NCBI GenBank assembly: GCA_002269645.1
Contig: NIVC01000251.1
Location: forward strand, 496,001-560,000
Direction of reading: 5' to 3'
Origin: Macrostomum lignano
Taxonomy: Eukaryota
DNA: 64,000 nucleotides
Under the pieces are notes generated by a model, which saw only the letters and a list, made by a program, of their open reading frames with translations, had not been told where the DNA came from and did no database searches. This document shows, one piece after another, positions 1 through 62,765 of this stretch. How positions within the stretch are numbered: the stretch's first letter is position 1; each line of letters begins with the position of its first letter. The position numbers and the translations under genes are program-made.

Positions 1-481
1 TGACTGACTGACTGACTGACTGACTGACTGACTGACTGACTGACTGACTGACTGACTGACTGACTGACTGACTGACTTAAGTGAATGGGTGACTGACTGA
101 CTGACTGACTGACTGACTGACTGACTGACTGACTGACTGACTGACTGACTGACTGACTGACTGACTTAAGTGAATGGGTGACTGACTGACTCACTGACTG
201 ACTGACTGACTTAAGTGAATGGGTGACTGACTGACTCACTGACTGACTGACTGACTTAAGTGAATGGGTGACTGACTGACTCACTGACTGACTGACTGAC
301 TGACTGACTCACTGACTGACTGACTGACTGACTGACTGACTGACTGACTGACTGACTGACTGACTGACTGACTGACTGACTGACTGACTGGCTGACTGAC
401 TGACTGACTGACTGACTGACTGACTGACTGACTGACTGACTGACTGACTGACTGACTGGCTGACTGACTGACTGACTGACT
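1..481. repeat. (TGAC)n microsatellite with four embedded TTAAGTGAATGGG interruptions
   Basis: Direct reading. Interruptions start at 77, 166, 211 and 256. The SQSV ORFs at 256-534 are artefacts of this repeat. Confidence 0.97.
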
Positions 482-880
482 GAATTGGCCGAAATTGACA
501 AAGCATAGAAAAAAATGACAATGCAAACATGCAATTACTAGTATTTCACAATACGTAGCTGTGATTTTATTTGAAGTACTGAGTTTATTTGAATAGTATT
601 TTAAATCAATTTTCTGTTATCAGAAAGTTGAAAGAAACAGTTAAACAACGGATCTCACAAAGCAGAAAAGTGGATAGTGGGCAGTTAGTTTTCTATGTTA
701 TCGTATCGTTGAAAATACGAAATACATGCAGATAGCTATAAATAGAGTTGTGATTCAATGTGCTTGCTTCAGGCTGAGTCTGAAAAGGATAAACTAAACG
801 TTTTGCGGATTTATTTATCAGCAATTATATGTGCAGACTGCAGTCTTCTATGGTGTTCAACGTTTGAATTAAAAATGAAC

Positions 881-1352
881 TCATAGTAAGCCGAGCTGCT
901 GGCGGAGTCGCCTGCGAATGAAGTTGAACAGAGGAATGTAGGACGGTCGGCTCAGTCTGTTCGAGAGTCCTGCGTAGGTATTGTAAGGTTTTTAGAAATT
1001 AGCATTGCTAGAGGATTTTAAAGAAACATGAAAAAGCCGCACCTTTCTTGTCTCGCCTTCCAGCAGCAATCGATGACTTGTTGGCAGTCCCGCCGCCTTC
1101 TTTGCGATGCTGCTGCAAACCGCGTAAAATTTCGATGCACAATCGCATGGCAACCAGTTTGTCCACGGTAGCTTTCGTTGAGGCCATCAACTTGTTGATG
1201 ACATCGTCCGGTGACCACCAATCAGCTCGTTCAACGTCGATCTTGTCCATTTTCATCAAAGGCTGGCTGATGGCGATGGGCAGGGCGATGGCAGAAGCGA
1301 CCGCCACTGCGGCGACGCTGACCAGGGCGAATATGACAAGAAATTTTACCAT
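881..1352 (-). CDS. Secreted peptide precursor, paralog P1 (2 exons, 132 aa)
   Basis: Exon 1 is 1352-1043 (signal peptide MVKFLVIFALVSVAAVAVASAIA..., ending RRDKK). A phase-1 intron occupies 1042-970 (GTGCGG...ACGCAG). Exon 2 is 969-881 and gives G-LSNRLSRPSYIPLFNFIRRRLRQQLGLL*. Minus-strand AATAAA at 815-810. Exon 2 is homologous to exon 2 of P2 and P3. Confidence 0.88.
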
Positions 1353-1414
1353 GGTTGCTTTCCGAGATTGCTAGCTTTTCTCAATGGGAATGCTTTCTAC
1401 TCATTTTCGAAAAC

Positions 1415-1421
1415 TTTTATA
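1415..1421 (-). promoter_or_regulatory. Candidate TATA box of P1
   Basis: TATAAAA on the minus strand about 63 nt upstream of the P1 ATG. The position is consistent, but function is inferred. Confidence 0.5.
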
Positions 1422-3675
1422 GGCGAATCCAAAGTGAAGGCGGCTTAACAGATTAAAATTGTGGGGGTGGCTTGAGGAAGATTGGCTGTCGACGATTTCC
1501 TGGGGGGGGGATGATTAGGCCTAAAAAATTGTGCAAAATTGTTTTGAAATAATAAACACGTGCATCGCACCGCACGCAGAACAGAACGTCTATCGATTAG
1601 GTAGAAGCGATGATCAAATCTCAGACTAATTACGACAGAGATAATCGAACACCTGCATGATTTCCCTGCCTAATATGTTTATTTCTCTACGCCAATATCG
1701 ATCCCTTCATTTGGAGCCAAATAGCTCCAAAATTGGAGCCAAAATCCCGTTATACCGAAAATATGGCGACAAATGCGATAAATGGGGATTTCATGTGATC
1801 GGAAACCTTCCTGTGCTATTTTCAGTTTAATACACGAACGTAGGTTTTCATTGTGCTTTTTTTCAGGACCTTCTAGCAGGCCACCATTTATGAAAAATTG
1901 CACTAAAACCTGACGCTAGTTACATGAGAACGCCTTAAGCTGTTGTTTTACGCATATCAATGTCTCAAATGTCTTGAGGACTTCTTTCAGTGTAGAAGAT
2001 AGATTAATCACGAGATAAGGTAACAAGCATATACTGTGCAACGGTGTACAAAAATTACTCCGCACTTGTGGAGCCTTAAGTTCACATGAAATCCCAATTT
2101 ATCCCATTCTCCCCATAGAGATCGACAAATTCTAAAGTGGTCGATTTTCGATTTAATGGCTTCAAATATAGCAAAGACAGAGGCAAGCGGTCGAGTTGTG
2201 AATAGAGTCGGGTCGCTCTTTAACAAAAAGGATTTAAAAAAGGACACTAGACACAGCCTTTGAGTTGGCCCTAATAATGGGTGTGATGCGGATGGCACGG
2301 CAACACATCAGGCCAAATTTTGTGGCCGAGCAGGGTGAGGCTACTCTGCCCTCTACTGTCTGGCAAAGCAAAGGTATCGTACTACTAATATTAGCTAGAA
2401 TCGGTTGAGTGTGTCTAACCTTAGGCGTTTAAGGCTGCTCGCAATTTGCCATAACTGTCGATTCGTGCCTACTAAGTGAAAATCCCAGGTAAGTGCAAGT
2501 ACCATTCGTAGAGGATTTCGTAGGATTTTTTTGTTACTTTGTGTACAATGAACGTAAAAATACAGAAAGCTAGTGAATATCAAAATACAAAATACAACAG
2601 TTACAATCTCTTGAGTAAACGGAGTATTCAAGTTCATCATTTTTTTCTGCACCGATATGAAGTCGAATTGCAGTTGCCTTCTAGCTTGCGTGTTGTCTTT
2701 GATGAATTTTGCCAGAATTTCCATCTTGATCCACTGGAGTAAGGTTTTTTAATATTCGAAACCTTATATCCAAGATGTCCTGTTTAAATTGGTCACCGAG
2801 AGCACTATGTAGTTCCAACTGCATTTAAACAGGGGCGAACTTAAATTTCTATACCCTCACATGGCCCTTTGGGCAGTCGTTAGTCTCATTCTAAAGTTAT
2901 ATGATTTTGTATAAAGTTCTTTCTCATATTTTTTTATTGGTTGGCAGGATCATCACAAGATAATTGATATAGATGTAAACAAAATTCACAGCATTATCGG
3001 TTATGCTGGTCGCCACACCTTGTAATATTACATTTTGTTATAACGCGCAGAAGCTTCCAGAATATTCCGATACTCTCGCAGCACAAACTAAAACTACCGC
3101 CGATCGCTCTTTCGACATCCGCGACACGAAACGTCAGTCCTCGCTGGTTGGACGCCTGAAGCGATAACAGCAGTACCTCCTGCTGTTAATTCCTAATTCA
3201 TATTTTTTTGTCGACAAAACAAGCAGGCTAAAACACCGTCATAATTGCCGTAGCTAGATTGCTTGACTTCAGCCGTAAATTTAACTCGGCTTCGAAGAGT
3301 TTAAACCCGTTTTATTTATTAGTAGACAACGTTTAGACAAGTAATAAAATTCTGGTTACAGGGCTTTGGGATAAGAATCGGTAGAGAGCCTAAGGAATTA
3401 GCATAGCATCACTACAACAAATATAGTTAATTTTGAATTGCAACACATAGTTTTTTATTTGGGTTTAAAATTATATTTCTCTTTATAATCTCTTCAAGGG
3501 ATGCATATATAGCTTTATAAATGTATACTTCTGAAACAGAGTGGGCCGAGTTTTTAACTTTTTTTAGAGACACTTGGATTTTTGAGACAAAAAAGTCGTT
3601 CAACTACACAGTACTATTTTAAAATCTAAAATTTTTACTCGTCCGTAACGCCCAAGCATCAAAATGGTTGCTTGA

Positions 3676-4089
3676 TTACTGCAGCTCGATGCGAAGCGCG
3701 CCGCGTAGAAAGTTGAACATTGGAATGTAAGAGTGCCGGTGCATATAGTGTTCCATACCTGTGGGAGACAAAAAAATGAATAAACAATTATACAATATGA
3801 CTAGATTCGAATGCAGTTTCAAAGCGTAGAGACCAACGGTAAAAAAGGTGCACATACCTTTCTTGATTCGGCTGACGGATTCAATTTTGTTGGATGCTTC
3901 GCTAGCAGGTTTTTCACCAGCAGGCAAGTTCTGCTGCAGCTGGGGCATCAGAAAGACCCTCATGAAATAGTTGGTCAGCCGACTGGCCAGCTGGTCGATG
4001 GCAGCGTTCGGCATCGGCCGACCACTGGCCCCACCAATGGCCACTGCAGACAAGCAGACGAAAGCGACAATCATGATCCGGTGATGCAT
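3676..4089 (-). CDS. Secreted peptide precursor, paralog P2 (2 exons, 104 aa)
   Basis: ATG at 4089 (MHHRIMIVAFVCLSAVAIGGASG signal). Exon 1 is 4089-3858, ending RIKK. A phase-1 intron occupies 3857-3759 (GTATGT...CCACAG). Exon 2 is 3758-3676 and gives G-MEHYMHRHSYIPMFNFLRGALRIELQ*. Confidence 0.9.
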   Translation of the reverse strand: MHHRIMIVAFVCLSAVAIGGASGRPMPNAAIDQLASRLTNYFMRVFLMPQLQQNLPAGEKPASEASNKIESVSRIKKGMCTFFTVGLYALKLHSNLVILYNCLFIFLSPTGMEHYMHRHSYIPMFNFLRGALRIELQ

Positions 4090-4178
4090 ATTGCTGCAAA
4101 ACAAATTCTTAAGTCAGAGTTGAGCTGTAAGTTCGCGCCGGCACAACTTCACAGTGGTTGTTTTTTCAGGGTTCCGTA

Positions 4179-4198
4179 TCGGCCTTGCTTATATAGAC
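4179..4198 (-). promoter_or_regulatory. TATA-containing promoter motif of P2 (GTCTATATAAGCAAGGCCGA)
   Basis: Matches the motif upstream of P3 (17265-17283) apart from a 1-nt indel, and contains TATATAA. Confidence 0.65.
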
Positions 4199-5820
4199 GG
4201 ATTCATCGGTCGGTGCGCTGAGATTGGCTTGCGACATCTGTTAAGTTTTCCTGGTAGAAAAATAGCTCAATTTGGATGGACTCTTCGCTGCTTCACATCG
4301 ACGCAGGTGAATAATTAGCAATTTAACAAAAATTGCTCGAGCGCTGTTGCCAATTATAATTATAATTCGAAAACTACTGTCGCACGGGCTCTTCTATTCA
4401 ATTTTTTCCGACCGGTGAGACTTCACTTGCTTCAGCATTTTTCTCGTCAGCACGTTTTTCGGCAGCTGGCAAATTAGGGCTTTCTTGTGAGCCATCGAAA
4501 GTTACGGGGAAAATTTGAGGTAGCTGCCGAAGACAGCTTAGATCGAGATAGCTGTCGTTCCAGGCGGTGGACGAGACGGTGAGGTACTCGATTGACTTCT
4601 GCCGAGCGCCGGGCCACCTTCAAGATCGGTGACGAGCGAGTTTCAAAAGCGGTGGCACTTTCTCACCGCGCTAGCCTGGTCCATCCAAGCGATCTGTTGC
4701 GCCGTTGGCGACTCCAGCTGGCAAGCCTTGCGCACACTCGACTGCTGTTGTTGTTATTGTTTTGTTGGCCTAAGAAAAGGGGACGTCAACGAAGCGGTGA
4801 AATGGATCAGGACCAAACCGACTGGAATCAATAACTGACTGGACAAGTTGACTGCGTCTGTCTGTGATGGTGTCATCATCCGCCGCAACAGCGCCGTCTT
4901 CAACAATCTATGGTGGCCTCCTCACTTGCCATTTGGATTGGATTGGATCCCACTAAAAAAGCTTGGTCGGATTCCGATCGGAAATGCAGCTCGGAAACCG
5001 AGTGGAAATTTGTCCCGGGAAATCCATTCGGATTCTGATCGGATTTGACGATCGGACTCATCCAGAGCTTTTCGTTTCACTTTCCGAGCTGATATAAATG
5101 ACGAAGCACAAAGCGAGTACAAACATGCATGTGCTACAATGTAGCCGAAGATCAGTGTACACGCAGTCACGCATGTACATTTAGACAGCCCGATCCCGTC
5201 TGAAAATTCAATGACACAAAGACCGGGTGTGCATCATTTTACATCAAATACAAAATTGCTCAATGGCAGCAGATGGAAAGGAATAATAAGTGTTTATTTA
5301 GTGTTTACAAAATAGAACATTGCAGCAACGCGTGGTGGGCCACCAAAGCAGTCACTAATAGGGTGCAGGTTGGAGACAGTTCGACAAGTATTTTATAGTT
5401 GTTAGGTCAATTTGATTAGGCCTAGTGTAGTGCGGCTGAAAATGTTCTGTTAAAATTGCACTAAATATTTAATTGTTGCTATATAGTAACTATAGCAATT
5501 GCAAATAGCATTATTATGTTATTAATTTCTACTTTTTTGACCCTTGAAAATAAAGCAAATATTAATTATAAATTATTTTAATCGTTGTCTAATTAAAATA
5601 TAATCGCACCAGTTTGAAAAGCGCGCTGCAATCGAGTGAACAATTGTAAGGCGCTGCGCTGCGAGTGAACTGAAGACGTTAAATTGCTGTAGTGAAACTG
5701 TTCAAATTCGCGGCCTTCAAACCCAGTTGTACTACACTAGCATTTCGGTCTCGGAGCAGTTAAAATTTAAGTTAGCGCGAAGTTTCGACGAAAGGGACAA
5801 TTTTTTACTATGCCACCAAG

Positions 5821-8331
5821 TTACATATTTTCCTCGTCAGTGCTGTCGGATATGCGTTGCACTCGCATCGTCGAGCGACGCCTGCTTGGAGTGGGGGCGC
5901 CATGCCCGCCGGCCACGTCCGATTCAGCTGATCCCTCGTGGCTTCGACGCTTCCGGACGCCATCGAAGAACCGTTCGATTGCCTTATTGATGTCGTGCAG
6001 CGTAAATGAAGAGCCCAACGCGTCTGAAATTTGACAATCACAACATAAGCAGGTTGTCAAGTCCACAACTGTTGACCTGAGAGAAATACATGTATGAATT
6101 ACGGCATGAATACGTATGGTTATGGCAGTACCCACCCCGTACATTTATCAGTACGTTGTATCAGACAGTATATCACTATTGATATCACTATTAAGAATCA
6201 ACTCTGGTAATTGGTACATATGCGACAGTAAAGCATAACCTACCCTTCACAATCCCTCCAAAGCACTTGTCGAAAGACATCTTGGAGTTCTCTTGTTGGC
6301 CACGGCCTCGGGCATCCTTGCCGCCAGTGCGATTGAAGCGCTGCTGGAAGTCTCGCGCCAGAAGCTCGTTCATCGCATAGCGAACAGACTGAGTCACAGA
6401 AGGGCCCAGGCACTTTTTCTGAATGAACGAAGTCTAAAATTCACACATGAAAGCGTCTGGACCATTTCCCCGAGTCTACAGTACCGAAGTTCCGAACGCA
6501 TGGTGGAAGTTTAATAGTAAGAGAAATGCTCATAAGATATTAACTAACCAGCGCAGTCTTGGCCTCCGCACTGGCAGAAATCTTCTCGACTGCACTGTTG
6601 AGGTCGGCCTCGTTTGCGACAGGAAGCCCGAATGGAATTTCGAGCGTGGGTGCCGCAGCAGCTCCCCGGAGACTGGACGACTCAATCGTGGCCTTTAGCT
6701 TCATGAGTTCGCGAATGCTCAAGAGCTGCAGACAGTAGAGCCCTGAATAATGAGTTGAAAGTTGCATAGTAAATTAACTTCAATTTACGTGCCAGTTCCA
6801 AGCTAGACGCTGTCGATTTCATCCACCTAGCTGTTCAAGCAACGAGTGTGCGCTGGTCACCAGTTACATTTTGCGGCTGTTGTCAACTACTGCTATCTCA
6901 GCGTCAATAACAATAACTCCATTACCTTCAACAGATCCCCACGTGTACCCACAAGCCTCAACCTGGCTTCTGGCTTGCGTTTCCAGCTGAGGCAGAGCTG
7001 AAAACTGTGGATTAAATTTTCGTTAGAAACCGTGGCAAGTTCTGAAAAAAACTGTTGCAAGACTTCATGAAACGAGTTTTACAAATTACCTGCGCAGGCT
7101 GTCGCAGCTGTTCGCGCGAGAAGCTGGCTCTTGGGGCTGAAGTTGGAGTGCACGAAAACTGCCTAGACGGGTGTCGAGTAGGCGTCGAGCTTCCAGACGA
7201 ATTGAGAGCTGCTTGAGGGTGCAGTCGCTCAAAGGCTGGGCTGTCGATCGACTGCGGTTCTGGTGGAGGTGCCATGGAGGTGCGGTTCTGAAGTTTCCTG
7301 ACAGTGCTCTGCGCCATTGTGCCGTCGTAGGCCTGGGTTGGTAAAGAAATGATTAGAATAGATAATTTTTTTCTCAGCACGTTAATCTGTAACATAGTAG
7401 GAGAAATGATATACTCAACAGTAACCATACACGCATTGAATGAGATGATGCAGACATAACAGAGGTGTATAGATATAAACATAACAATGTGATGTGTGAC
7501 AACAAGCCGTCACGCTAGCCTGGCATTGGGGTGAGGTGAAGACAGTGTTAGATTAGAGAAATTAAAGAAAAGAATAAAATCCAAACTATTAAAACTGTCT
7601 CAATCATTTTGTAATATGTCTGGCAAACTGCCAAGTGCAATAATTTGAAATTAATAAGCATACTGTACTCCAAATGCATGAATACATAAAGACTATAAAT
7701 GCTTGACATTTTTAAATAGACACAAATGTAAGCACGTACTTCTGCAATTCCCGAAGCTTGCAGAGTTGGCAGTGGAGGGAGGCAAACAACACCAGAAGAC
7801 CCAGACAATGATTCACTTCTCTGTGTGGGACCCCGGTTGGCTTGTCCATGGCTGGCTGCATCAGCAACCTACAATTATATTATTTTATATTTTATATTAA
7901 CGCACGTGGCAGACCTTAGTTGTATACTAAATATTAAATTAAATATTATTTTACATTATACTTACAGCATCAATATCTGTTGCATCATTGTCTGTCTCAA
8001 GATTCTTCATAGGAGGAAATGTCTGTCTTTTGTTGGATCGAACACGATCTGGCAGAATTTTTAGTAGCTTGCTTGGACGATAGTGCTTCTCTTTGACCAC
8101 AGCTCGTAGCATGGCAACAGTGTCACTGGTGTCACAGGCATGTGGAACAACTTGCAAAACAATGCAATCTTCCAACTTGTCATTATATATTACCTGAATA
8201 TGAACTTCTTCAAGTTTGTCCACTTGCCTCCATTGCTCAATAGTCCACTTAGTAAAAGAGCCAAGAAGGCAATCTTCCTCATCAGCTTCTATTACTTCAT
8301 AGTCAGAGGTAAAATACACAATAAACTTCAT
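5821..8331 (-). CDS. Spliced accessory gene of the CACTA element with a C-terminal DUF4806/BEN-like domain
   Basis: Several ORF-track fragments join through GT-AG sites (about 8331-7965, 7870-7740, 7333-7090, 6745-6550, 6420-6245, 6024-5821). The C-terminal part reads VRYAMNELLARDFQQRFNRTGGK...KMSFDKCFGGIVK|DALGSSFTLHDINKAIERFF. Exons at 6790-7000 and 6430-6530 are not resolved, and the domain call is by resemblance. Confidence 0.6.
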
Positions 8332-9032
8332 TGAGTCACTGCAACAAGATTACTGAACTAAAGTTTTATTATTTAATGATTTAGCAACTGCACAAGACAC
8401 TGCATGTACTAAGAAGGACTATTTACTCATTGTGGTGTAATGTTGGCCAAGCAGTAACTAAAGTTTTTACAGCATAATATGGCACATAACATGTAATTAT
8501 TCCATTGGAACAAGTGAGTTACAAATTTAGAGGATACACAAAAAATGTTTATTGAATTGTTCATAGGGGCCTATTGCTACTTGCTAACTTACTAGTAGAC
8601 AACTTGTCAAAATACATTTACACTAGAATTCTGCCACAAAAATCATAAATAGTCTGACTAGGACATTCACATTGAAGGACACATTACTTAAATAATACGT
8701 ACTCATATTTGCAAGCACTTAGGAAGGTTATAATAAAGCATAGAAATTATACAAAACAATAATAATTGTTTTTTGTAATAAAATTAATTAATAATAATAA
8801 TAAAAATAATAATGATCATCTTATTTCATACCATGATCCGAACAAATGCTTTAGTTTGTTAATGGCTATAATGGCTATACTACTTCAATATTATATAATA
8901 TATATGGAATTATATATTTTTTTATTCTAGACCTAATTAAATTATATTTGCTGACTGTATACACAATTACATTTGTAAACAACTTAGGCAAGACACAATT
9001 ATGGACGATGGACTTCAGGCAAATAACTTGAT

Positions 9033-10943
9033 TTACTTGATGCAAGGAATGACCAGATAGTCTCCGCCAAAGGGAATTAGAATGGCCTTCTTAGAAGGTT
9101 GCAAGTTGGATACAAATGTCTTTGAATGCTTATAGTAGCCTATGCCAATTGATTTTGATGGATATGGATAGGAATAAAGGCTTCTATCAAATGTGAGAAC
9201 CTGGCCTGAAATAAGACCATCATTTAAATTGGTGACAATGACAACCTTTCCATCAACAATAGCACAGTTATTAGGACTCTTATTAGTAAAACCAATGTCA
9301 CCCAACTTGTCATTAGAATATAAAAATCTCACATTCAACAACTGGTTGACAGATTGGGCAAAAACATGATTGGTACAACGAATTCTCTTCTTGATCAATT
9401 GCAAGTAGTTTTCAAAAGGGAAAGCTGAAAACGTGTCAAGTGGGCCATACATTTGCACAAACTCAGGAAGGTGCAACAGAGCATGCCAATTATAAGAAAC
9501 TACACTGTTGTAATATAGGCTTGGTGCCTCAGCAACAAACTTTTTCAAACAAGCCTCAGCAGCATCAAAATAAATTTCACAGTACTCAGGTGAATTAAGG
9601 ACTGAAATTGACCAATGCAATAATAGATAATGATTAAAGTAGACCTTTGGCAAGGTATTCTTAAAAAGGAACGGACCAAAGTACAAAAGACATTGGCGGA
9701 ATTCCGTTGCTTTAAAGTATTCAATGTCAGCAAAAGTGCGAAGCCGTCTTTGAAAATCTGAAGGAACAAATTCCTTAATATACATTATTTTTCTATTTAT
9801 TTCCTCTTTTAATTGGGATGACAACTTGCAAGCAAGTCGAATGTGCTTTGCTCCAAGGAAGTAAAATTTGAGCAACTTCTTTACAACCCCTAAGTAGACA
9901 ATATGCATTGGGTCGGGTACAAAATTGGAATACATTGGAACAATCCTGGCTAGTGGAGAAATACCAAGTTGGTTATTTTCACGCCCTTGTTCATAATCTT
10001 GATTTGTTCGAGCCTCTGCAATGGTATTAGAAAAACAAATTCTGTCACCTGTGTAATTTCCTACTTGACGACACCAACTACAGCCAAGATAACTGGAATG
10101 ACCTTTCAAACATTGAATAAAGTTTCTAGCAGGTGTGTCACAGATAAAGACAATTGACTTAATAAAAATTCTTTTCATATTATAGTCAAAACCATTCTGT
10201 AGACCTGCAATTTCAGAACAAAACCTTTCTAAGAAGACATGTAGGTCAGGCTTTCCAATGCCACAAAAAAGGCCAAATGGCACAGGTCTAAAACAATTAT
10301 TTACTAGCATCAATATAGGCCAAAGATTGATTCTAGATGACTTGAATAAAGGAAGACCATCAACATTTACCCTTAAGGAAACAAAGAAGTTTGTAATTCC
10401 AGATGGAATTGTAAGGATTTTGGAATCAAGTAAAAATTTCAAATTGTCCACAATGGAGAGAAAGGCAACATGACCATTATTGACATTGAACCTCGTGATC
10501 TCTGTGCTTGGACACTGCCTCTTAAGCATGTAGACAGAAGTGGGTATGTCAGTGAAGAAACGAGCCAAAAGCCGAAGTAGGTAATTCATGGCAGCACTAG
10601 TAATATTGAATGTTATGTAAAACAATAGTAACTCTTGCACCAAAGTAAGTGGCGGAGGTCTATTATAGCCAAGAGAGTCATCTTGTTCTTCAACTTCTTC
10701 ATCCATTTCTTCCTCAAAAAGAGCATGCATTTGGCTATCAAAGTCCATTGGCATTGGACCCACTGCATCAAAGAATGTCTCTTCAGGCTCAGCATTGCTC
10801 TTTGTATCTTCATTTTGTCCCATCACATTTTCTAGATCTAGCCTAGCCTCAATATTTGTAGCCCCAATCGTCGGAAGCTCTTGTAGTATTTCTTGCATTT
10901 CCCTGGCTACCTGTCTATTTGATGCACGACTTGGCAAAGCCAT
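9033..10943 (-). CDS. CACTA/EnSpm-like DDE transposase, 636 aa, uninterrupted
   Basis: Motifs VNVDGLPLFKSS..LWPI, ICDTPAR..KGH.S..GC..C, DPMHIVYLGVVK, FKATEFRQ.LLY, YNWHALLH and GPL..FSAFPFENY are typical of CMC/EnSpm transposases. It lies between the TIRs. Confidence 0.9.
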   Translation of the reverse strand: MALPSRASNRQVAREMQEILQELPTIGATNIEARLDLENVMGQNEDTKSNAEPEETFFDAVGPMPMDFDSQMHALFEEEMDEEVEEQDDSLGYNRPPPLTLVQELLLFYITFNITSAAMNYLLRLLARFFTDIPTSVYMLKRQCPSTEITRFNVNNGHVAFLSIVDNLKFLLDSKILTIPSGITNFFVSLRVNVDGLPLFKSSRINLWPILMLVNNCFRPVPFGLFCGIGKPDLHVFLERFCSEIAGLQNGFDYNMKRIFIKSIVFICDTPARNFIQCLKGHSSYLGCSWCRQVGNYTGDRICFSNTIAEARTNQDYEQGRENNQLGISPLARIVPMYSNFVPDPMHIVYLGVVKKLLKFYFLGAKHIRLACKLSSQLKEEINRKIMYIKEFVPSDFQRRLRTFADIEYFKATEFRQCLLYFGPFLFKNTLPKVYFNHYLLLHWSISVLNSPEYCEIYFDAAEACLKKFVAEAPSLYYNSVVSYNWHALLHLPEFVQMYGPLDTFSAFPFENYLQLIKKRIRCTNHVFAQSVNQLLNVRFLYSNDKLGDIGFTNKSPNNCAIVDGKVVIVTNLNDGLISGQVLTFDRSLYSYPYPSKSIGIGYYKHSKTFVSNLQPSKKAILIPFGGDYLVIPCIK

Positions 10944-13522
10944 TAAATCAAATTAATCAATAAATGACAATACTTATTTATTATTAGAACTAGCTTTTGC
11001 CTTATATGTTTTTAGTACACAATGTAGTCAATTATTTTAATTTGCAGTCTCTTTCAATATGAGAAATCTAGGACTAGCACTAGATAGAATTTATAGAATT
11101 GGCCCTTGTTTACTACTTTGCGATGGTCTGAATTGAAACTGGCTATGAGTATAGTACAATGTCAGTATATATTATGTATAGCTGGACAATTGGTGCCTAT
11201 CATATACTGTACTCAAATATTAATAAGCTTCTGCAAGTGCCACTATGGTCAAAACTCACTATGCAGTATTGCAGTATACCAAATTGTTCTTTTTAGGTAT
11301 AGTATAATAGTTTTGGCTAGCTGTTATCACAAATAAACAATAATAATATATTTTATTACTGAAATTAGCGATTATATAGTCCGCCAGTAAAAAATTCAAG
11401 CATACAAGATAATAGGAGACTAAAGAAATGCACTAAATGAACGAAAGGAGTAGCATACTAGTATAGTATTTGCGTGTAACCACAGATGAAGTTGCAGAGA
11501 GTTCAAAGTTGTGGTCTCACTGTCCTGTGTTGGCTAAAGGAGCTGTGTTCAAAAGAGCTGATGTTCCAAGCGAGCGCAAATTAGTGAAAATGGAAGTGTG
11601 CAAATTAAACTGGTCAATAGCTTCAACACTTGATCGCGTAAAACAAAGCTTGCTAGCTGTTCTTCTTGCAAATTGCGAGGGCGCAGAATTCCCGTCTAAA
11701 AGAGTTTTTTCTTCAAAGTGGACAGTCATCATACTAGTTGATAAGTATGCTGATATTTTTGCGAAGCTTGCGTTCAAAATTATTGTCGGAAAGTGACGGC
11801 TCGGGTGCAGTGTAAATTCCGGTCGGAATATGGAGCCTCATATTCCGGTATGTTTCCGGGGTGCTTCCGAGAAGCAAAGAAAGCCAGGAAATACTTTGTG
11901 TAGTTTTTGGATGTCATTGGAGCACATTTTTCATCGTTTTTTTGCTTGCAAATCTAGTTCCACCAGATTCCGATTGCCCTGCTAAAATCCGGCCAGATTC
12001 CGATGTCAATCCGATAACCCGTTTTTAGTGGGATTGTCACTTGGATTGGCCTTATGGCTGCCAACAGATAAAGCAAAAACCTCCCAATAAATCTGGAAGG
12101 AATTTCTTTGCTTGCTTTGTCGATTCCGGAATTCGTTTGACTCAGTGTTGAGTCCGCACTCTTATTCCGATCAAAGTTTCACATCCATTGATCGATGTCG
12201 TCATTATTCGACTGTATCACGATCCTCAAGCTGCTGTTTTGGCTGTGGATTTCTAACTTTTTTCTGTTCAAATCTCGTCAGGTGCTCTACTGGGCGAAAT
12301 GCGTGCGTCATATTCCTCTTGGGCGCCTCAGCGTGCTGAGCTCATCCAAGTAGACTCACTCCTTTGTAGTCTTAGAAGATCGTTAGATGATAAAAAAAAT
12401 TGGGTTCACTACATGGAAGGATCAACCAGTATAAGCTTGGTAAAAGAAAGTCGGGAGATAAAACAGAAATTTTGTCGAGTATTTCCAACGACGGTACCCA
12501 CGGCACCGATTAGAGATGAGCAATTACTTCACCGCTTCTTTGTCCAATTCAATTGCTGAAGCGCAATTTCCTAAGCACAGCTGCAGTTGAATGCGCTGAG
12601 GGAAAATTATATCAAACGAACAGCATCTTGGGTTTTCTAAATCGTTGCCTTTGGGAGAAATTATCCATTTTTCATACACCTGAGCAAGAAAATAGCTTGC
12701 ATGAATTTCGCTTTTAGACAGCTCTGGGTGCTGACGCAACTTAGAGACTTGGTACTGCCGAGAGTATGGAGGGGTATTGCTGAAATGCTGTGGCTCGTTG
12801 GGGAGAATTTTCTGGGATGTCGAGGCTCATGATGCTGAAATGCGATGGAACTTTTTGCTGGCTCATGAAGGAGAACATGTTGGCTAACGCTCCCGACTGC
12901 CAGTAATCCCGCGCGGCTGTCCCCTGTCCTTTACCTGCCCAAGCTCGTCGGCAGTTTGGTCCTGGCGGTCCTACTGCAGAGCGTGACTGCAGAGTGTCGA
13001 CCCACGGCGACCCACAGCTACTGAACTACACGACTTATCTGGTTGAGGCTCGTCTGAGGTCGTATAATAACAGCTAAGCTAAAGAACTCGTTACCAAGAG
13101 GCTGAATTGAGATCGGGACTCAACAAAACGAGAAAACATAAAAAATAGCAACAAAAACTGTAAAGCCGGTGTAACAAAATTTGTGTTTTAAGGGGCTCCG
13201 TCGAGAGGGTCACAAAACTAGTTACCCAAACTTCGAAAACTAGCCGGTACCCACGGCAGAACTTCCTCTCATTCGAAGTGGAGTGATAAACCAGTACATG
13301 GTTACGCGTTCGCAGAGTTTGGAGTAGGGATCGAGACGCAGCCCCCTGATAAAGTTCAGCCCCAAATGCACTAAACCCCTGTGCCCTCTGGCGGAGTGGA
13401 GATCTTTAACGCATTGGTTGCGGTAGATTAGACTATATCCGATTCTCTTGAATCTCGATTCTCTTCTCTCTTGGCTTCTCTCCATCACGGTACTTTTAGT
13501 CCCTTCATCGTCAACAGAACAT

Positions 13523-14420
13523 GTCTTTTCCGTCGCCTTTTCTGTGGCCTTTTCTGAGGCCTTTTCTGTGGCCTTTTCTGTGGCCTTTTCTGTGGCCTTT
13601 TCTGTGGCCTTTTCTGTTGCCTTTTCCGAGGCCTTTTCTGTGGCCTTTTCTGTAGCCTTTTCTGAGGCCTTTTCTGAGGCCTTTTCTGTGGCCTTTTCTG
13701 AGGCCTTTTCTGTGGCCTTTTCTGTAGCCTTTTCTGAGTCCTTTACTGAGGCCTTTTCTGTGGCCTTTTTTGAGGCCTTTTCTGTGGCCTTTTCTGTAGC
13801 CTTTTCTGAGTCCTTTACTGAGGCCTTTTCTGTGGCCTTTTCTGTGGCCTTTTCTGTTGCCTTTTTTGAGGCCTTTTCTGTGGCCTTTTCTGTAGCCTTT
13901 TCTGAGTCCTTTACTGAGGCCTTTTCTGTGGCCTTTTTTGAGGCCTTTTCTGTGGCCTTTTCTGTAGCCTTTTCTGAGTCCTTTACTGAGGCCTTTTCTG
14001 TGGCCTTTTCTGAGTCCTTTACTGAGGCCTTTTCTGTGGCCTTTTCTGTGGCCTTTTCTGTAGCCTTTTCTGAGTCCTTTACTGAGGCCTTTTCTGTAGC
14101 CTTTTCTGAGTCCTTTACTGAGGCCTTTTCTGTGGCCTTTTCTGTTGCCTTTTTTGAGGCCTTTTCTGTGGCCTTTTCTGTAGCCTTTTCTGAGTCCTTT
14201 ACTGAGGCCTTTTCTGTGGCCTTTTCTGTTGCCTTTTCTGAGGCCTTTTCTGTGGCCTTTTCTGAGGCCTTTTCTGTGGCCTTTTCTGTGGCCTTTTCTG
14301 TAGCCTTTTCTGAGGCCTTTTCTGTGGCTTTTTCTGTGGCCTTTTCTGAAGCCTTTTCTGTGGCCTTTTCTGTGGCCTTTTCTAAAGCCTTTTCTGTGGC
14401 CTTTTCTGAGTCTTTTCCGT
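13523..14420. repeat. 12-bp minisatellite (GCCTTTTCTGTG and variants), about 74 units with higher-order blocks
   Basis: Direct reading. Variant units (GCCTTTTCTGAG, TCCTTTACTGAG, GCCTTTTTTGAG) recur in blocks. It produces the FSVA ORF on plus and the GHRK ORF on minus. Confidence 0.95.
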
Positions 14421-15781
14421 GGGCCGGTCCTCATATCCGGTTCTAGTAGCCGGTTCTGCTACAGGTCAATTTGGCTTGCTCAAATGAAGAGGGGACTTGG
14501 GGCACGTCCTGCTGTTTCTATCTGCTTTGCACTTCTCATCGCTGGCTTTTTTTCCCTTGTGGCTCTGGAGCTCTTCAATTCAAGCTTTTATGCATCCGTA
14601 GCGATCTGTTGGGACTTCACGAAGATTCCAGCGGTCAGACGGCATCATCCGCGAAGAGAACTTGCTTCCTTACAGCTAGCAGCGGAGGTGCTGCAGGAGC
14701 CACTCGGCGACTGCCTGTTGGATGGCGCCCCATGTCCGGTTGGCCCCCTGTGACGCTGCTCTGCCAGTTTCTTAAGACTGTCTGACTGCGTCGTTGGACT
14801 GATGGAAATTTACCTTACCGTAGAATAGTTGTTAAAACTCAAACGGCAGCAGAATTGGTCCAACTGATATTCATGTCAAAAAAGCTTCGTGTCTTTAACT
14901 TCAAACTTCGTACGTCTCTTGTTTAAATTATGAGACAGATCACTCCTAATACTAAAACTGACGTTTGTCTGTCTGTCCTAATACTAAAACTGACGCGATG
15001 TTTGTCTGTGTGTGTGTGTATTGCAAGTGAACTCCTACAATACTTGCAAGTCAGCGTCGAAATTTATATGGGAAAACTGCAAATTTTCCGGAGCAGGCTT
15101 TAGGCTATTTTAAGAGATGAGAGGAGAGACAGGAGAGACTAGATATAAGATAGCAAAGAAAAGAGAGCAGAGATGAGAGACTAGAGATGGAAAGCAGATT
15201 AGAGAGAAGAGATAAGAGACTACACTGTAGAGATGAGAGGGCAAAGAGGAGAGCAAAAAAGGCTTTACAGAGGATTTGGAGATGATTTGGAAGATGGGAT
15301 TCAAGTCATGGAGTTTCAGCTGATGGATTTCAGGCAATGGAATTCCGGTGATGGGATTTCTTCCCCTATCTCCTCCGGAGGAGGAGTTCCACTCGTTTTT
15401 TTATGAAACTGAAATAATCTTAGTCAACAAGATGATTTGCATAAAATTCCATCCTTCAAAAAAATTCAAATTTGTATCTATAAAATTTAATATATATTAA
15501 AGCAAATTTTACAAGCGTAGTAAGCATGATCGCAAAATCGATTCGTCTTTTTATTCGCGTGAAACAGAAAATTCGTATTCGGGACAGTCAAATACTTCTT
15601 CAGTAGACAAGAAAGAATTTTTAAATCAAATACAGTTTTGAACTTATTCAGAGCTTTCAATTCAAATTTGAATCAGCAATGATAATGTAATATTAAATAG
15701 GATTTCGATGAAAATTTAAAAATCAAGCCGCGTTCACTCCAGTCAGAGGCACAATGTATGCAACTGACTTGGATGGGGTGA

Positions 15782-16747
15782 ACAATCAAGGTCACAAAAA
15801 TAAAGGAGACAGATCGTTTTACAATCAAGGTCACAAAAATAAAGGAGATAGATCGTTTTACAATCAAGGTCACAAAAATAAAGGAGATAGATCGTTTTAC
15901 AATCAAGGTCACAAAAATAAAGGAGATAGATCGTTTTACAATCAAGGTCACAAAAATAAAGGAGATGGATCGTTTTACAATCAAGGTCACAAAAATAAAG
16001 GAGATAGATCGTTTTACAATCAAGGTCACAAAAATAAAGGAGATAGATCGTTTTACAATCAAGGTCACAAAAATAAAGGAGATAGATCGTTTTACAATCA
16101 AGGTCACAAAAATAAAGGAGATAGATCGTTTTACAATCAAGGTCACAAAAATAAAGGAGATAGATCGTTTTACAATCAAGGTCACAAAAATAAAGGAGAT
16201 AGATCGTTTTACAATCAAGGTCACAAAAATAAAGGAGATAGATCGTTTTACAATCAAGGTCACAAAAATAAAGGAGATAGATCGTTTTACAATCAAGGTC
16301 ACAAAAATAAAGGAGATAGATCGTTTTACAATCAAGGTCACAAAAATAAAGGGGATAGATCGTTTTACAATCAAGGTCACAAAAATAAAGGAGATAGATC
16401 GTTTTACAATCAAGGTCACAAAAATAAAGGAGATAGATCGTTTTACAATCAAGGTCACAAAAATAAAGGAGATAGATCGTTTTACAATCAAGGTCACAAA
16501 AATAAAAGAGATAGATCGTTTTACAATCAAGGTCACAAAAATAAAGGAGATAGATCGTTTTACAATCAAGGTCACAAAAATAAAAGAGATAGATCGTTTT
16601 ACAATCAAGGTCACAAAAATAAAGGAGATAGATCGTTTTACAATCAAGGTCACAAAAATAAAAGAGATAGATCGTTTTACAATCAAGGTCACAAAAATAA
16701 AGAAGATAGATCGTTTTACAATCAAGGTCACAAAAATAAAGGAGATA
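15782..16747. repeat. 39-bp tandem repeat, 24 full units plus 1 partial, near-identical
   Basis: Unit ACAATCAAGGTCACAAAAATAAAGGAGATAGATCGTTTT with only scattered single substitutions. It ends 41 nt from the P3 stop codon. Confidence 0.97.
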
Positions 16748-16788
16748 CTCGTACGTAGATCGTTTTTATCAGTCTATCTTGCCAAACT

Positions 16789-17208
16789 TCATTTGATTTT
16801 GTAGCGAAGCGTTCCGCGGAGAAAGTTGAACAACGGAATGTAGGAATTTCGGCTCAGGTTCTGATCAGTATCTGCGGTAGGAGGTCAGATTTGCAACAGT
16901 TGAAACTTTTGTTGTTGAAGCATCAAAATGCTCGCACAATGAATAAGATACTCACTTTTCTTAGCCCGACGAGAGTTGCGTTCTGGTTGGGGTATTTTCT
17001 CCAGGTTGTTCAGTTGTTCAACCACGTAAGCTTTAATGATCTCGCTTGCCAGCTGAATAGCCATTTGGTTTAACACTGTTTCCAACTGTACCAACTTGTT
17101 GTTAGTAGCTGTAGGCCTCTTCAGTCCCTCTTCGACTGGTAGAGCAATGGCCGAAGACACCACAGCCGAGAAGACCACTAGAGCCAGAAGGATGGATCGA
17201 TGGTGCAT
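16789..17208 (-). CDS. Secreted peptide precursor, paralog P3 (2 exons, 111 aa)
   Basis: Exon 1 is 17208-16956 (MHHRSILLALVVFSAVVSSAIA signal, ending RRAKK). A phase-1 intron occupies 16955-16872 (GTGAGT...CCGCAG). Exon 2 is 16871-16789 and gives N-TDQNLSRNSYIPLFNFLRGTLRYKIK*. Confidence 0.9.
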
Positions 17209-17264
17209 GGTCGATCTTTAGCTTTGGAGCTTTGTTACAAACCTGCAATTGAAACCTGCAAAAA

Positions 17265-17283
17265 TCGGCTTGCTTATATAGAC
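17265..17283 (-). promoter_or_regulatory. TATA-containing promoter motif of P3 (GTCTATATAAGCAAGCCGA)
   Basis: Near-identical to 4179-4198 upstream of P2. Confidence 0.65.
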
Positions 17284-17633
17284 AACATTGACACTTAATT
17301 GGGCTTGGCCTTGGGCCCGGGATTGGTCCAGCAGATCAGCGGTAATTTTGCGGCGCTGTTAAACGGCAGTTCTGGAGGCAGCTGCAGACGCATAGAGCTA
17401 TTAAATCCAACAATCACCTGTGGTGCTCAAGATAATAGTTAACCATCCTTGATCACCGGGGTATGGGTGGGCAGGCATTCTACAGTATTCAAAGATAAGG
17501 CCCAAAACTTTAAAATAAAATAACACTTCGCCGCGCATTTGCGTCAAGAAAAGCAATTTTCTCTGTTAGATTGGAAGAATTAAAAAAGATTGCAGATGAT
17601 TGTTGAAGTTATTTGGCACCTGGGCTAAAATAA

Positions 17634-18774: not shown

Positions 18775-18913
18775 CCAAGAAGCGTCCCAGAGTCCCTTAC
18801 CGACTCGTTGTAAGTAATACGTAAAATAGGAAAGAAGTGACTCTGCCTTGGTTTGCTCTGAGGCGCGCTTATCTTCCGGCTCTCGCTAACCTTAGTCAAT
18901 TTTTTGCTGAATC

Positions 18914-21900: not shown

Positions 21901-22430
21901 GACTGCGAGCTATCAAGAAGCGGCCGGTATCCCCCTTTATGCTGGTTCCAGCTGGCTTGCTTGGCGGTAGTCTTCTGCTGCTGGTGGGGTATGCTCCGCG
22001 CAAGTCTAGTCTGCTTCCCCGCAGAGCTAAGGGCACAGAGCTCATGCAGCGCTCCAACCTGCAGAGGTACCCCAGGGGTCTTGTCCTGCGCTGCCATCGG
22101 ACAGTTTAAGGACCATCGGACAGTTTAAGGAGCGCGTGCATCTGTTCCTTCTTCCAAGACTGGCTCGGCGGTTGGCAAATGGAGCAAACACACATGGGAA
22201 GGAATCGGTTTGCGCGCAGTGTTCAGCCTGGCTAACATTAGTCTATGGCCAAAACTTGTGTTGAAATCAACAGGCTCTTATGGATTCTTGTGCAGTCAGC
22301 TTTCATGGGAGAGTCAATTGCTTGTTTGTCTTTTCCTCACTTTTTTTCTCTAACCTTTATGTACATAACACTGGCCTGTTCACACGCGCTCCTTCGAATA
22401 AACTTTTTCTTGACCACATCATGGAGCTGA
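18914..22430 (+). mobile_element. Degenerate DIRS/Ngaro-type tyrosine-recombinase retrotransposon
   Basis: In order: gag-like ORF with a SAP-like motif (LRERLQGLGLPTYGNKGELIERL) and a CCCH-type finger (ICFDFNKEAGCCRRNCRFSHRC); RT (RLIHDCSRP, KVDLREAYR, RLPFG, YLDDF); RNase H (IESDAC, INYKE, YCDNQA, ADAASR); start of a YR integrase (SLLSASYAPSS.., WGMLRAS). There are many frameshifts and stops, YR is truncated near a 19-bp duplication at 22094-22131, and AATAAA is at about 22397. Ends are approximate. Confidence 0.88.
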
Positions 22431-62491: not shown

Positions 62492-62765
62492 CCTGTCTAA
62501 CAGGTGTGACATTATCCCCTGTCTAACAGGTGTGACACTATCCCCTGTCTAACAGGTGTGACACTATCCCCTGTCTAACAGGTGTGACACTATCCCCTGT
62601 CTAACAGGTGTGACACTATCTCCTGTCTAACAGGTGTGACACTATCCCCTGTCTAACAGGTGTGACACTATCCCCTGTCTAACAGGTGTGACACTACTCC
62701 TGTCTAACAGGTGTGACACTATCTCCTGTCTAACAGGTGTGACACTATCCCCTGTCTAACAGGTG
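62492..62765. repeat. 26-bp minisatellite (GTCTAACAGGTGTGACACTATCCCCT), about 10 units
   Basis: Direct reading. It shares its core with the 20- and 22-bp arrays. Confidence 0.93.

What the first reader, a model, noticed from the sequence alone, without database searches (positions are those of the whole stretch)
881..17208. Hidden cluster of three secreted-peptide precursor genes sharing an SYIP[LM]FNF[IL]RxxLR mature peptide
Seen: three minus-strand two-exon genes, each with a signal peptide, a divergent pro-region, an R-x-(x)-K-K site and a phase-1 intron (73, 99 and 84 nt) directly after the KK codons. Exon 2 encodes the whole predicted mature peptide: GLSNRLSRPSYIPLFNFIRRRLRQQLGLL, GMEHYMHRHSYIPMFNFLRGALRIELQ and NTDQNLSRNSYIPLFNFLRGTLRYKIK. 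The pro-regions barely align, while the 14-residue core is strongly conserved, which points to selection on the released peptide. The peptides are Cys-free, lack a C-terminal amidation Gly, and are predicted to form an amphipathic helix after the Pro, with P1 and P3 net cationic. Established: signal-pro-dibasic-peptide is the architecture of peptide hormones, pheromones and linear antimicrobial peptides. Inference: this is a small bioactive peptide family I do not recognise, and ORF-based annotation would miss it.
Basis: partly seen in the sequence, partly recalled or inferred. Interest (0 to 1): 0.88.

Follow-up and report, generated by a model that had tools for sequence, protein, structure and literature searches.

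The report
Cluster of three secreted-peptide precursor genes
Three small neighbouring two-exon genes encode secreted precursor proteins that differ almost everywhere except a strictly conserved 16-residue tail, the pattern expected of an uncharacterised peptide-hormone-like family, whose only detectable relative is an unnamed flatworm protein.

Summary
Three minus-strand genes (132, 104 and 111 aa) each have a hydrophobic signal peptide, a divergent pro-region, an R-x-K-K site, a GT..AG phase-1 intron (73, 99, 84 nt) right after the KK codons, and a second exon carrying R-x-SYIP[LM]FNF-x-R-x-x-LR. The core is under strong purifying selection (dN/dS 0.11-0.17, synonymous sites near saturation), while the pro-regions barely align. 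Three of the window's four CTATAWAAG sites lie 62-106 nt upstream of the three start codons.

There is no Pfam match and no paper prints the motif. Very large protein searches found one relative: UniProt A0A1I8HG52, an unnamed 104-aa "Secreted protein" of the flatworm Macrostomum lignano. It has the same architecture and no intron-derived insertion. This, plus a 16% tandem-repeat content, suggests a Macrostomum-like flatworm rather than an insect.

My best reading is a lineage-restricted prohormone-type family releasing a 27-29-residue, non-amidated C-terminal ligand. Processing and function are inferred, not shown. The amphipathic-helix and antimicrobial readings are not supported. Resemblance to Drosophila limostatin is not significant. 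"Hidden from ORF-based annotation" is only partly true.

The parts
1043..1352 (-). P1 exon 1 (coding): signal peptide, 77-residue pro-region, RRDKK, first base of the split Gly codon
970..1042 (-). P1 intron, 73 nt, GTGCGG..CGCAG, phase 1, CTAAT branch-like motif
881..969 (-). P1 exon 2 coding part incl. stop: GLSNRLSRPSYIPLFNFIRRRLRQQLGLL (core RPSYIPLFNFIRRRLR = 902-949)
1414..1422 (-). P1 TATA box CTATAAAAG, 62 nt upstream of the ATG; CAAGCCA motif at 1468-1474
810..815 (-). P1 AATAAA polyadenylation hexamer, 66 nt after the stop
3858..4089 (-). P2 exon 1 (coding): signal peptide, pro-region, RIKK, first base of the split Gly codon
3759..3857 (-). P2 intron, 99 nt, GTATGT..CACAG, phase 1; stop-free and in frame, so the unspliced ORF also reads through
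3676..3758 (-). P2 exon 2 coding part incl. stop: GMEHYMHRHSYIPMFNFLRGALRIELQ (core 3691-3738)
4188..4196 (-). P2 TATA box CTATATAAG, 98 nt upstream of the ATG; CAAGCCA motif at 4225-4231
16956..17208 (-). P3 exon 1 (coding): signal peptide, pro-region, RRAKK, first base of the split Asn codon
16872..16955 (-). P3 intron, 84 nt, GTGAGT..CGCAG, phase 1
16789..16871 (-). P3 exon 2 coding part incl. stop: NTDQNLSRNSYIPLFNFLRGTLRYKIK (core 16804-16851)
17273..17281 (-). P3 TATA box CTATATAAG, 64 nt upstream of the ATG; CAAGGCCA motif at 17306-17313

Best explanation
P1, P2 and P3 are old tandem paralogues of a lineage-restricted prohormone-type gene family.

Shown:
- Each gene has its own TATA promoter.
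- Each has a two-exon coding region joined by a canonical phase-1 intron.
- Each has a strongly hydrophobic N-terminus with -3/-1 signal-peptidase sites.
- Each has a conserved R-x-K-K motif at the exon 1/exon 2 boundary.
- Each has a C-terminal core, R-x-SYIP[LM]FNF-x-R-x-x-LR, held by purifying selection while the rest of the protein has diverged almost beyond alignment.

Inferred:
- The precursor enters the secretory pathway.
- A subtilisin-like proprotein convertase cuts after R-x-K-K, and a carboxypeptidase trims the lysines.
- The 27-29-residue, Cys-free, non-amidated exon-2 peptide is released.
- The invariant SYIP[LM]FNF..R..LR segment is the receptor-contacting part of a signalling ligand (neuropeptide or hormone type). 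The three paralogues would deliver variants that differ in their flanks and charge.

The source genome is probably a Macrostomum-like flatworm.
For: - Gene structure and translations.
- Hydrophobic N-terminal regions (Kyte-Doolittle 2.9-3.3 over 10 residues) with several -3/-1 sites.
- R-x-K-K is invariant in P1-P3 and in the outside homologue P0001.
- Core dN/dS is 0.11-0.17 with pS 0.49-0.63, while pro-regions align at z 1.5-3.
- Only four CTATAWAAG sites occur in 64 kb (1.28 expected), and three sit 62-106 nt upstream of the three ATGs on the correct strand. A shared CAAGCCA-type motif lies 30-50 nt further upstream.
- P0001 (M. lignano A0A1I8HG52, 104 aa, 64-73% identical to P2) has the same layout. 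It reads ..SRSKKG|AVATYVSRRSYIPMFNFLRGAIR.. with no equivalent of the 33 residues that an unspliced P2 would add. This is independent support for the splice junction.
- The genes meet the operational criteria used to define flatworm prohormone genes (signal sequence, basic site flanking the peptide, under 200 aa; Collins et al. 2010, PMC2953531).
- A variable pro-region with an invariant mature core is the pattern expected of ligands constrained by a receptor. This last point rests on established knowledge, not a test here.
Against: - There is no transcript, peptide or expression evidence of any kind.
- Lys at P1 (K-K) is an uncommon convertase site, and there is no C-terminal amidation signal.
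- No second cleavage site is conserved, so the true mature form is unknown.
- Only one homologue was found in billions of proteins, so conservation rests on four sequences.
- P3 has no canonical polyadenylation hexamer within 400 nt, and a 39-bp minisatellite starts about 40 nt after its stop.
- The AlphaFold2 model of P2 has pLDDT 56 and neither supports nor excludes a folded, unprocessed protein.
Confidence: 0.5

Rival explanations
1. These are small secreted proteins that are not cleaved internally, for example gland, adhesive or seminal-fluid secretions. The conserved C-terminal tail would be a binding or sorting motif within the intact protein of about 80-110 residues. The R-x-K-K would be conserved for another reason, or because it straddles the splice site.
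For: - K-K is a poor convertase site.
- AlphaFold2 predicts three helices after the signal peptide that could form a small bundle, though at low confidence.
- The N-terminal pro-region block GRPMPNAAIDQ[LV]ASRLTN is also well conserved between P2 and P0001.
- Rapidly evolving secreted reproductive proteins are common in Macrostomum (PMC10468722).
Against: - Among the three paralogues only the tail and the basic site are conserved, and the rest is nearly unalignable. That is unusual for a folded domain.
- pLDDT is 56.
Confidence: 0.27
2. These are linear cationic host-defence (antimicrobial) peptides released from an anionic or neutral pro-piece. This was one of the first reader's options.
For: - The peptides are Cys-free.
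- Net charge is +6 (P1), +4 (P3) and +6 (P0001).
- The genes form a multi-copy cluster.
Against: - P2 is only +1.
- The hydrophobic moment is no higher than in shuffled sequences (17-37% of shuffles reach it).
- A strictly invariant 8-residue motif with a variable pro-region is the opposite of the usual antimicrobial-peptide pattern of conserved prepro-region and hypervariable mature peptide.
- dN/dS of 0.11-0.17 indicates constraint, not diversifying selection.
Confidence: 0.08
3. These are members of the dipteran limostatin (Lst) family, the decretin hormone of Drosophila, reported as Limostatin 1 and 2 in Aedes aegypti. The window would then be from a fly or mosquito.
For: - Lst-15 (AIVFRPLFVYKQQEI; PMC13460628) shares [FY]-x-P-L-F-x-[FY] with SYIPLFNF.
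- The Drosophila precursor is 139 aa.
- Its postulated convertase sites are described as unusual (PMC4888303).
- Aedes has two copies, AAEL008355 and AAEL008359.
Against: - The similarity is not significant: best ungapped score 15-18, shuffle p 0.15-0.38.
- In Aedes the two genes are numbered either side of spinster and ablim, and next to Rdl. None of these is in this window.
- The protein collection holds Drosophila proteomes, yet no insect protein matched the family.
- The only homologue is labelled as a flatworm protein.
- The full Lst sequence could not be fetched, so the test is incomplete.
Confidence: 0.06
4. This is not a functional feature: chance ORFs, pseudogenes or repeat-derived sequence.
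For: - The window is 16% tandem repeat, and repeats here do generate spurious long ORFs with false Pfam hits.
- P3 abuts a minisatellite and lacks a polyadenylation hexamer.
Against: - None of the three genes overlaps a tandem array.
- All three have intact ORFs, canonical splice sites in the same phase and TATA boxes.
- There is strong purifying selection on the core, and an annotated homologue exists in another genome.
Confidence: 0.03

Closest known systems
UniProt A0A1I8HG52 (UniRef100_A0A1I8HG52), 'Secreted protein', Macrostomum lignano, 104 aa, uncharacterised
   Same: It shares the MHHR start, the signal peptide, the GRPMPNAAIDQ.ASRLTN pro-block, R-x-K-K-G, R-x-SYIPMFNFLRGA[IL]R and the length. 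It is 64-73% identical to P2, with E 3.8e-19 and 1.1e-43 against the family profiles.
   Different: It is not identical to any of the three genes. Its C-terminus is 6 residues longer, and it has RR immediately before SYIP. It has no name, function, Pfam domain or genomic record in the collections searched.
Flatworm secreted-peptide prohormones (planarian spp/npp genes, including the clustered 'Planarin' family SPP-6/7/8/9/17; Collins et al. 2010, PMC2953531)
   Same: Both have a signal sequence, basic sites flanking the peptide, a length under 200 aa, paralogues lying close together in the genome, and introns placed at the processing site.
   Different: There is no sequence similarity: FNF, PLFN and YIPL/YIPM are absent from that paper's text. 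Those peptides were confirmed by mass spectrometry and by pc2 RNAi, and many are amidated or occur in several copies per precursor. Here there is one non-amidated C-terminal peptide and no experimental evidence.
Limostatin (Drosophila CG8317; Aedes AAEL008355/AAEL008359)
   Same: Both are small secreted precursors of similar size, with a short conserved Cys-free non-amidated peptide containing P-L-F flanked by aromatic residues. Both have unusual basic sites, and mosquitoes carry more than one copy.
   Different: The similarity is not above chance. The synteny markers are absent. There are no insect hits although insects are in the database. The window is probably not dipteran.

Membership tests
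Prohormone / secreted-peptide precursor (operational definition of Collins et al. 2010) | N-terminal signal sequence | tested here: met
   Hydrophobic regions with mean Kyte-Doolittle 2.9-3.3 within residues 4-18, plus -3/-1 rule sites at residues 19-23 in all four proteins. This is a heuristic; SignalP was not available.
Prohormone / secreted-peptide precursor (operational definition of Collins et al. 2010) | Basic cleavage site(s) flanking the predicted peptide | tested here: met
   R-x-K-K is invariant in P1, P2, P3 and P0001, immediately before exon 2. The stop codon bounds the peptide on the other side.
Prohormone / secreted-peptide precursor (operational definition of Collins et al. 2010) | Precursor shorter than 200 aa and not similar to a non-hormone family | tested here: met
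   132, 104 and 111 aa. No Pfam family at or near its cut-off.
Prohormone / secreted-peptide precursor (operational definition of Collins et al. 2010) | Processed peptide detected, or dependent on prohormone convertase | not testable with these tools
   Needs peptidomics or RNAi in the source organism.
Limostatin | Significant similarity to the conserved 15-residue Lst peptide | tested here: not met
   Best ungapped BLOSUM62 score 15-18. Shuffled Lst-15 reaches it in 15-38% of trials.
Limostatin | Full-length homology to CG8317 / AAEL008355 | not testable with these tools
   The sequences could not be obtained. The Lst-15 profile search returned no candidate, and the papers with alignments are not held.
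Limostatin | Genomic neighbourhood (Aedes: next to Rdl, spinster, ablim) | tested here: not met
   Neighbours here are ARPC2, two DEG/ENaC genes, Amt and a retroelement. This is a weak test, since 64 kb is short for a mosquito locus.
Linear cationic amphipathic antimicrobial peptides | Amphipathic helix (hydrophobic moment above that of shuffled sequence) | tested here: not met
   Hydrophobic moment 0.38-0.53. The fraction of shuffles reaching it is 0.17-0.37.
Linear cationic amphipathic antimicrobial peptides | Consistently high net positive charge | tested here: inconclusive
   +6, +1, +4 and +6.
Amidated neuropeptides | C-terminal Gly followed by basic residues or a stop | tested here: not met
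   The peptides end ..QQLGLL..RIELQ and ..RYKIK. The internal LRG is followed by A or T, not by a basic residue.

The most novel reading that the evidence does not exclude
This is a previously undescribed, lineage-restricted (Macrostomum-type flatworm) peptide-hormone family. Several paralogous genes each release one long, non-amidated C-terminal ligand built around SYIP[LM]FNF-x-R-x-x-LR. Release would use an R-x-K-K site encoded exactly at a conserved phase-1 exon junction. The ligands would act on an as yet orphan receptor.
Probability: 0.35. Interest if true: 0.6.

Novelty: new member of a known kind. Interest (0 to 1): 0.45.

Why it matters
If the peptides are real ligands, this adds an uncharacterised signalling-peptide family, with three paralogues in one locus, to an animal lineage whose peptide hormones are poorly catalogued. 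It also gives a concrete target for peptidomics, in situ hybridisation, RNAi and receptor de-orphanisation. More generally, it shows that a short conserved exon preceded by a basic site and a phase-conserved intron is a usable signature for finding small peptide genes that homology searches miss. It does not overturn any concept, because the architecture is the standard one for peptide precursors.

Tried and rejected
- **Pfam on the three proteins:** nothing near a cut-off.
- **Word-indexed protein searches:** P3 alone found nothing. The three-gene profile found only P0001.
- **Full HMMER scan of 1.84 billion representatives:** P0001, plus two repeat proteins that match the signal and pro-region by composition and are spurious.
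- **Exact look-ups and contig look-ups** for P0001 and several window ORFs: nothing on record.
- **Collection scans for the core motif:** metagenome contigs gave 26 chance matches, none with the flanking R..LR context. Bacterial and archaeal genome contigs, searched for host contamination, gave nothing.
- **Rfam and tRNA scans** for taxon markers: nothing.
- **Limostatin lead:**
  - The 15-residue peptide could not retrieve Drosophila Lst. Queries were too short or too word-poor, and a padded profile found no candidate, although Drosophila proteins are in the collection. This is unexplained. It may mean the word index cannot find proteins that share only a very short stretch, which also limits what can exclude.
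  - The direct similarity test was negative.
- **Aedes tweedledee/tweedledum** (PMC10076016): rejected. [quoted passage not shown]
- **'Yae1' neighbour gene:** rejected as a translated minisatellite.
- **M. lignano spliced-leader sequence:** absent from the window, which is uninformative.
- **Literature searches for six-residue pieces of the core:** zero papers.


Full report
**1. The observation**

Reading the minus strand at the three places and translating with the proposed junctions gives three complete reading frames.

| Gene | Exon 1 | Intron | Exon 2 (incl. stop) | Protein |
|---|---|---|---|---|
| P1 | 1352..1043 (310 nt) | 73 nt | 969..881 | 132 aa |
| P2 | 4089..3858 (232 nt) | 99 nt | 3758..3676 | 104 aa |
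| P3 | 17208..16956 (253 nt) | 84 nt | 16871..16789 | 111 aa |

- All introns begin with GT and end with CAG. All are phase 1 and lie directly after the two Lys codons.
- Without splicing, P1 and P3 run into stops after 11 and 22 extra codons. P2 stays in frame and gains 33 residues.
- The exon-2 peptides are exactly those quoted in the finding.
- A six-frame motif scan and a tblastn of all four family proteins against the window find these three copies only.
- P1 is 880 nt from the left edge of the window, so the cluster may continue outside it.

**2. More than chance, and protein-level selection**

The 16-codon core (R-x-SYIP[LM]FNF-x-R-x-x-LR) differs between paralogues mostly at synonymous positions. 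pS is 0.49-0.63, pN is 0.08-0.20, and dN/dS is 0.11-0.17. The duplicates are therefore old, and the conservation is of the peptide, not of the DNA. The pro-regions between the signal peptide and KK align with z-scores of only 1.5-3.0 against shuffles.

Upstream, each gene has a TATA box (CTATAAAAG or CTATATAAG) 62-106 nt before its ATG. A CAAGCCA-type motif lies 30-50 nt further up. The 9-mer CTATAWAAG occurs only four times in the 64 kb on either strand (1.28 expected), and three of the four are these.

P1 has AATAAA 66 nt after its stop. P2 has AGTAAA at +37 and AATAAA at +217. P3 has no canonical hexamer within 400 nt, because a 39-bp minisatellite begins about 40 nt after its stop.

**3. 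Protein features**

- All proteins start with a strongly hydrophobic stretch (mean Kyte-Doolittle 2.9-3.3 over ten residues), followed by several -3/-1 rule sites around residues 19-23. No SignalP was available, so this is a heuristic call.
- The basic site is uniformly R-x-K-K: RRDKK, RIKK, RRAKK, and RSKK in the outside homologue.
- After it come 27-29 residues with net charge +6, +1 and +4. They contain no Cys and no amidation signal.
- The claimed amphipathic helix is not supported. The helical hydrophobic moment of the 14 residues from the Pro is 0.38-0.53, and 17-37% of shuffles reach it.
- AlphaFold2 on P2, with a three-sequence alignment, gives pLDDT 56. It predicts helices at 28-53, 68-85 and 89-103. 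This is too weak to decide between a folded protein and a processed precursor.

**4. Relatives**

- Pfam has nothing.
- The word-indexed search of 5.8 billion proteins found nothing for P3 alone.
- With the three-gene profile it found one protein, P0001.
- A full HMMER scan of 1.84 billion cluster representatives found the same protein (E = 1.1e-43), plus two repeat proteins that are compositional artefacts.

P0001 is UniProt A0A1I8HG52, an unnamed 104-aa 'Secreted protein' of the flatworm Macrostomum lignano. It is 64-73% identical to P2 and has the same MHHR start, signal peptide, pro-block, R-x-K-K-G and RRSYIPMFNFLRGAIR. It has no insertion where P2's intron lies, so its independent gene model supports the splice junction.

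No paper in the library prints any six-residue piece of the core. Motif scans of metagenome contigs, and of bacterial genome contigs searched for host contamination, gave only chance matches.

**5. What organism?**

This is not settled. The evidence points away from my first impression of a mosquito-like insect.

- The protein collection does contain Drosophila melanogaster and many other Drosophila proteomes from NCBI, UniRef and EukProt (control look-up). Even so, no insect protein matched the family.
- None of the window's complete ORFs is in the collection, so the source genome has no deposited proteome there.
- Tandem repeats cover 10.3 kb of the 64 kb, or 16%. Simple and tandem repeats are reported to make up 15% of the M. 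lignano genome, with mean introns of 1.1-1.4 kb (PMC5730564).
- The only homologue is from M. lignano.

I estimate about 70% that the window is from a Macrostomum-like flatworm. It could be another species, or a paralogous locus of M. lignano itself. The alternative is that the UniProt entry is a contaminant.

The real neighbours are:
- ARPC2 (exons 26607-26993 and 24435-24962, minus strand);
- two 87%-identical intronless DEG/ENaC genes in inverted orientation;
- an ammonium transporter at 51.5-58 kb;
- a degenerate retroelement.

The 'Yae1' ORF between P2 and P3 is a translated minisatellite, not a gene.

**6. Mechanism**

The pattern is an invariant C-terminal core, a variable pro-region, a conserved basic site at a phase-conserved exon boundary, a signal peptide and a length under 200 aa. 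This meets the operational definition used for flatworm prohormone genes (PMC2953531). That paper also describes clustered paralogous prohormone genes and introns placed at processing sites.

I therefore favour a prohormone-type family whose exon-2 peptide is a receptor ligand (confidence 0.5).

- Shown: gene structure, promoters, selection, one outside homologue.
- Inferred: secretion, cleavage at K-K, the identity of the mature peptide, and signalling function.

K-K with Arg at P4 is an unusual site. An Arg three residues before SYIP is also invariant, and P1 has RRR after FNFI, so other processing products are possible.

**7. Rivals**

- *Unprocessed small secreted protein (0.27).* This cannot be excluded. 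P2 and P0001 also share a conserved N-terminal pro-block.
- *Antimicrobial peptide (0.08).* This is disfavoured by the failed amphipathicity test, by P2's +1 charge, and by an evolutionary pattern opposite to that of linear antimicrobial peptides.
- *Limostatin (0.06).* I pursued this because Lst-15 (AIVFRPLFVYKQQEI) shares [FY]-x-PLF-x-[FY] with the core, and because Aedes has two 'limostatin' genes. However:
  - the similarity is at chance level;
  - the Aedes neighbours (Rdl, spinster, ablim) are absent here;
  - no insect hit exists;
  - the full Lst sequence could not be retrieved, so the test is incomplete.
- *Artefact or pseudogene (0.03).*

**8. Caveat on search sensitivity**

The padded Lst-15 profile found no candidate, even though Drosophila proteomes are in the collection. 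The word index may therefore miss proteins that share only a stretch of 15 residues or fewer. The full HMMER scan needs roughly 45 bits to reach E = 0.001 in 1.84 billion sequences. Distant relatives that keep only the core could therefore exist undetected. Close orthologues would have been found.

**9. Verdict**

This is a genuine, well-formed cluster of three secreted-peptide precursor genes of an uncharacterised, apparently lineage-restricted family. It is a new member of a well-known kind. It is interesting as a candidate ligand family, but it has no functional evidence and one already deposited, unnamed homologue.

Noticed in passing
window 13525-14422: A 36/48-bp minisatellite (about 19-25 copies, 87-89% matches) creates ORFs of more than 300 aa on both strands. 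One of them gives a false Pfam Yae1_N hit (E 1e-13). It is not a gene.
   Followed up: yes
window 15782-16747: A 39-bp minisatellite with 24.8 copies at 98% identity starts about 40 nt after the P3 stop codon. It produces ORFs of 279-352 aa and a false Pentapeptide_2 hit. P3 has no canonical polyadenylation hexamer because of it.
   Followed up: partly
window 39940-41691 (-) and 46683-48410 (+): Two intronless DEG/ENaC (Pfam ASC) genes of 583 and 575 aa are 87% identical and in inverted orientation about 5 kb apart, which indicates a recent inverted duplication. They are only weakly similar to solved ASIC and FaNaC channels (E about 1e-11, mainly TM2).
   Followed up: partly
window 24435-26993 (-): An ARPC2 (p34-Arc) gene. 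The intron between two of its exons is almost entirely filled by 33-, 24- and 48-bp minisatellites (25100-26578). Exon 24435-24962 matches bovine and human ARPC2 in the PDB at E = 3.1e-63.
   Followed up: partly
window 51501-58021 (-) and on to 63988: An ammonium-transporter (Amt) gene whose introns and flank are packed with tandem arrays (periods 18-26). Three different arrays (56504-57402, 57996-60074, 62492-62765) share the core TCTAACAGGT. Overall 16% of the window is tandem repeat.
   Followed up: partly
window 18911-22125 (+): A degenerate retroelement-like region split over several frames. It includes an ORF with a SAP domain, a CCCH-type zinc-finger-like motif, and a reverse-transcriptase-like 'RVRLIHDCSRP' stretch. 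Pfam recognises only the SAP domain.
   Followed up: partly
window 9033-10943 (-): An intact 636-aa ORF between P2 and P3 with only a sub-threshold DUF4218 (transposase-associated) hit. It is possibly a transposase of an unclassified DNA element.
   Followed up: no
window 1-483: A (TGAC)n microsatellite of about 120 copies at the left edge, 400 nt downstream of the P1 3' end.
   Followed up: no
window 4090-4100 and 17240-17262 (-): TTGCAG motifs, which match the [T/C]TNCAG acceptor motif reported for spliced-leader trans-splicing in M. lignano, lie 4 nt (P2) and about 35-50 nt (P3) upstream of the ATGs. They could be trans-splice or 5'-UTR intron acceptors, or chance.
   Followed up: no
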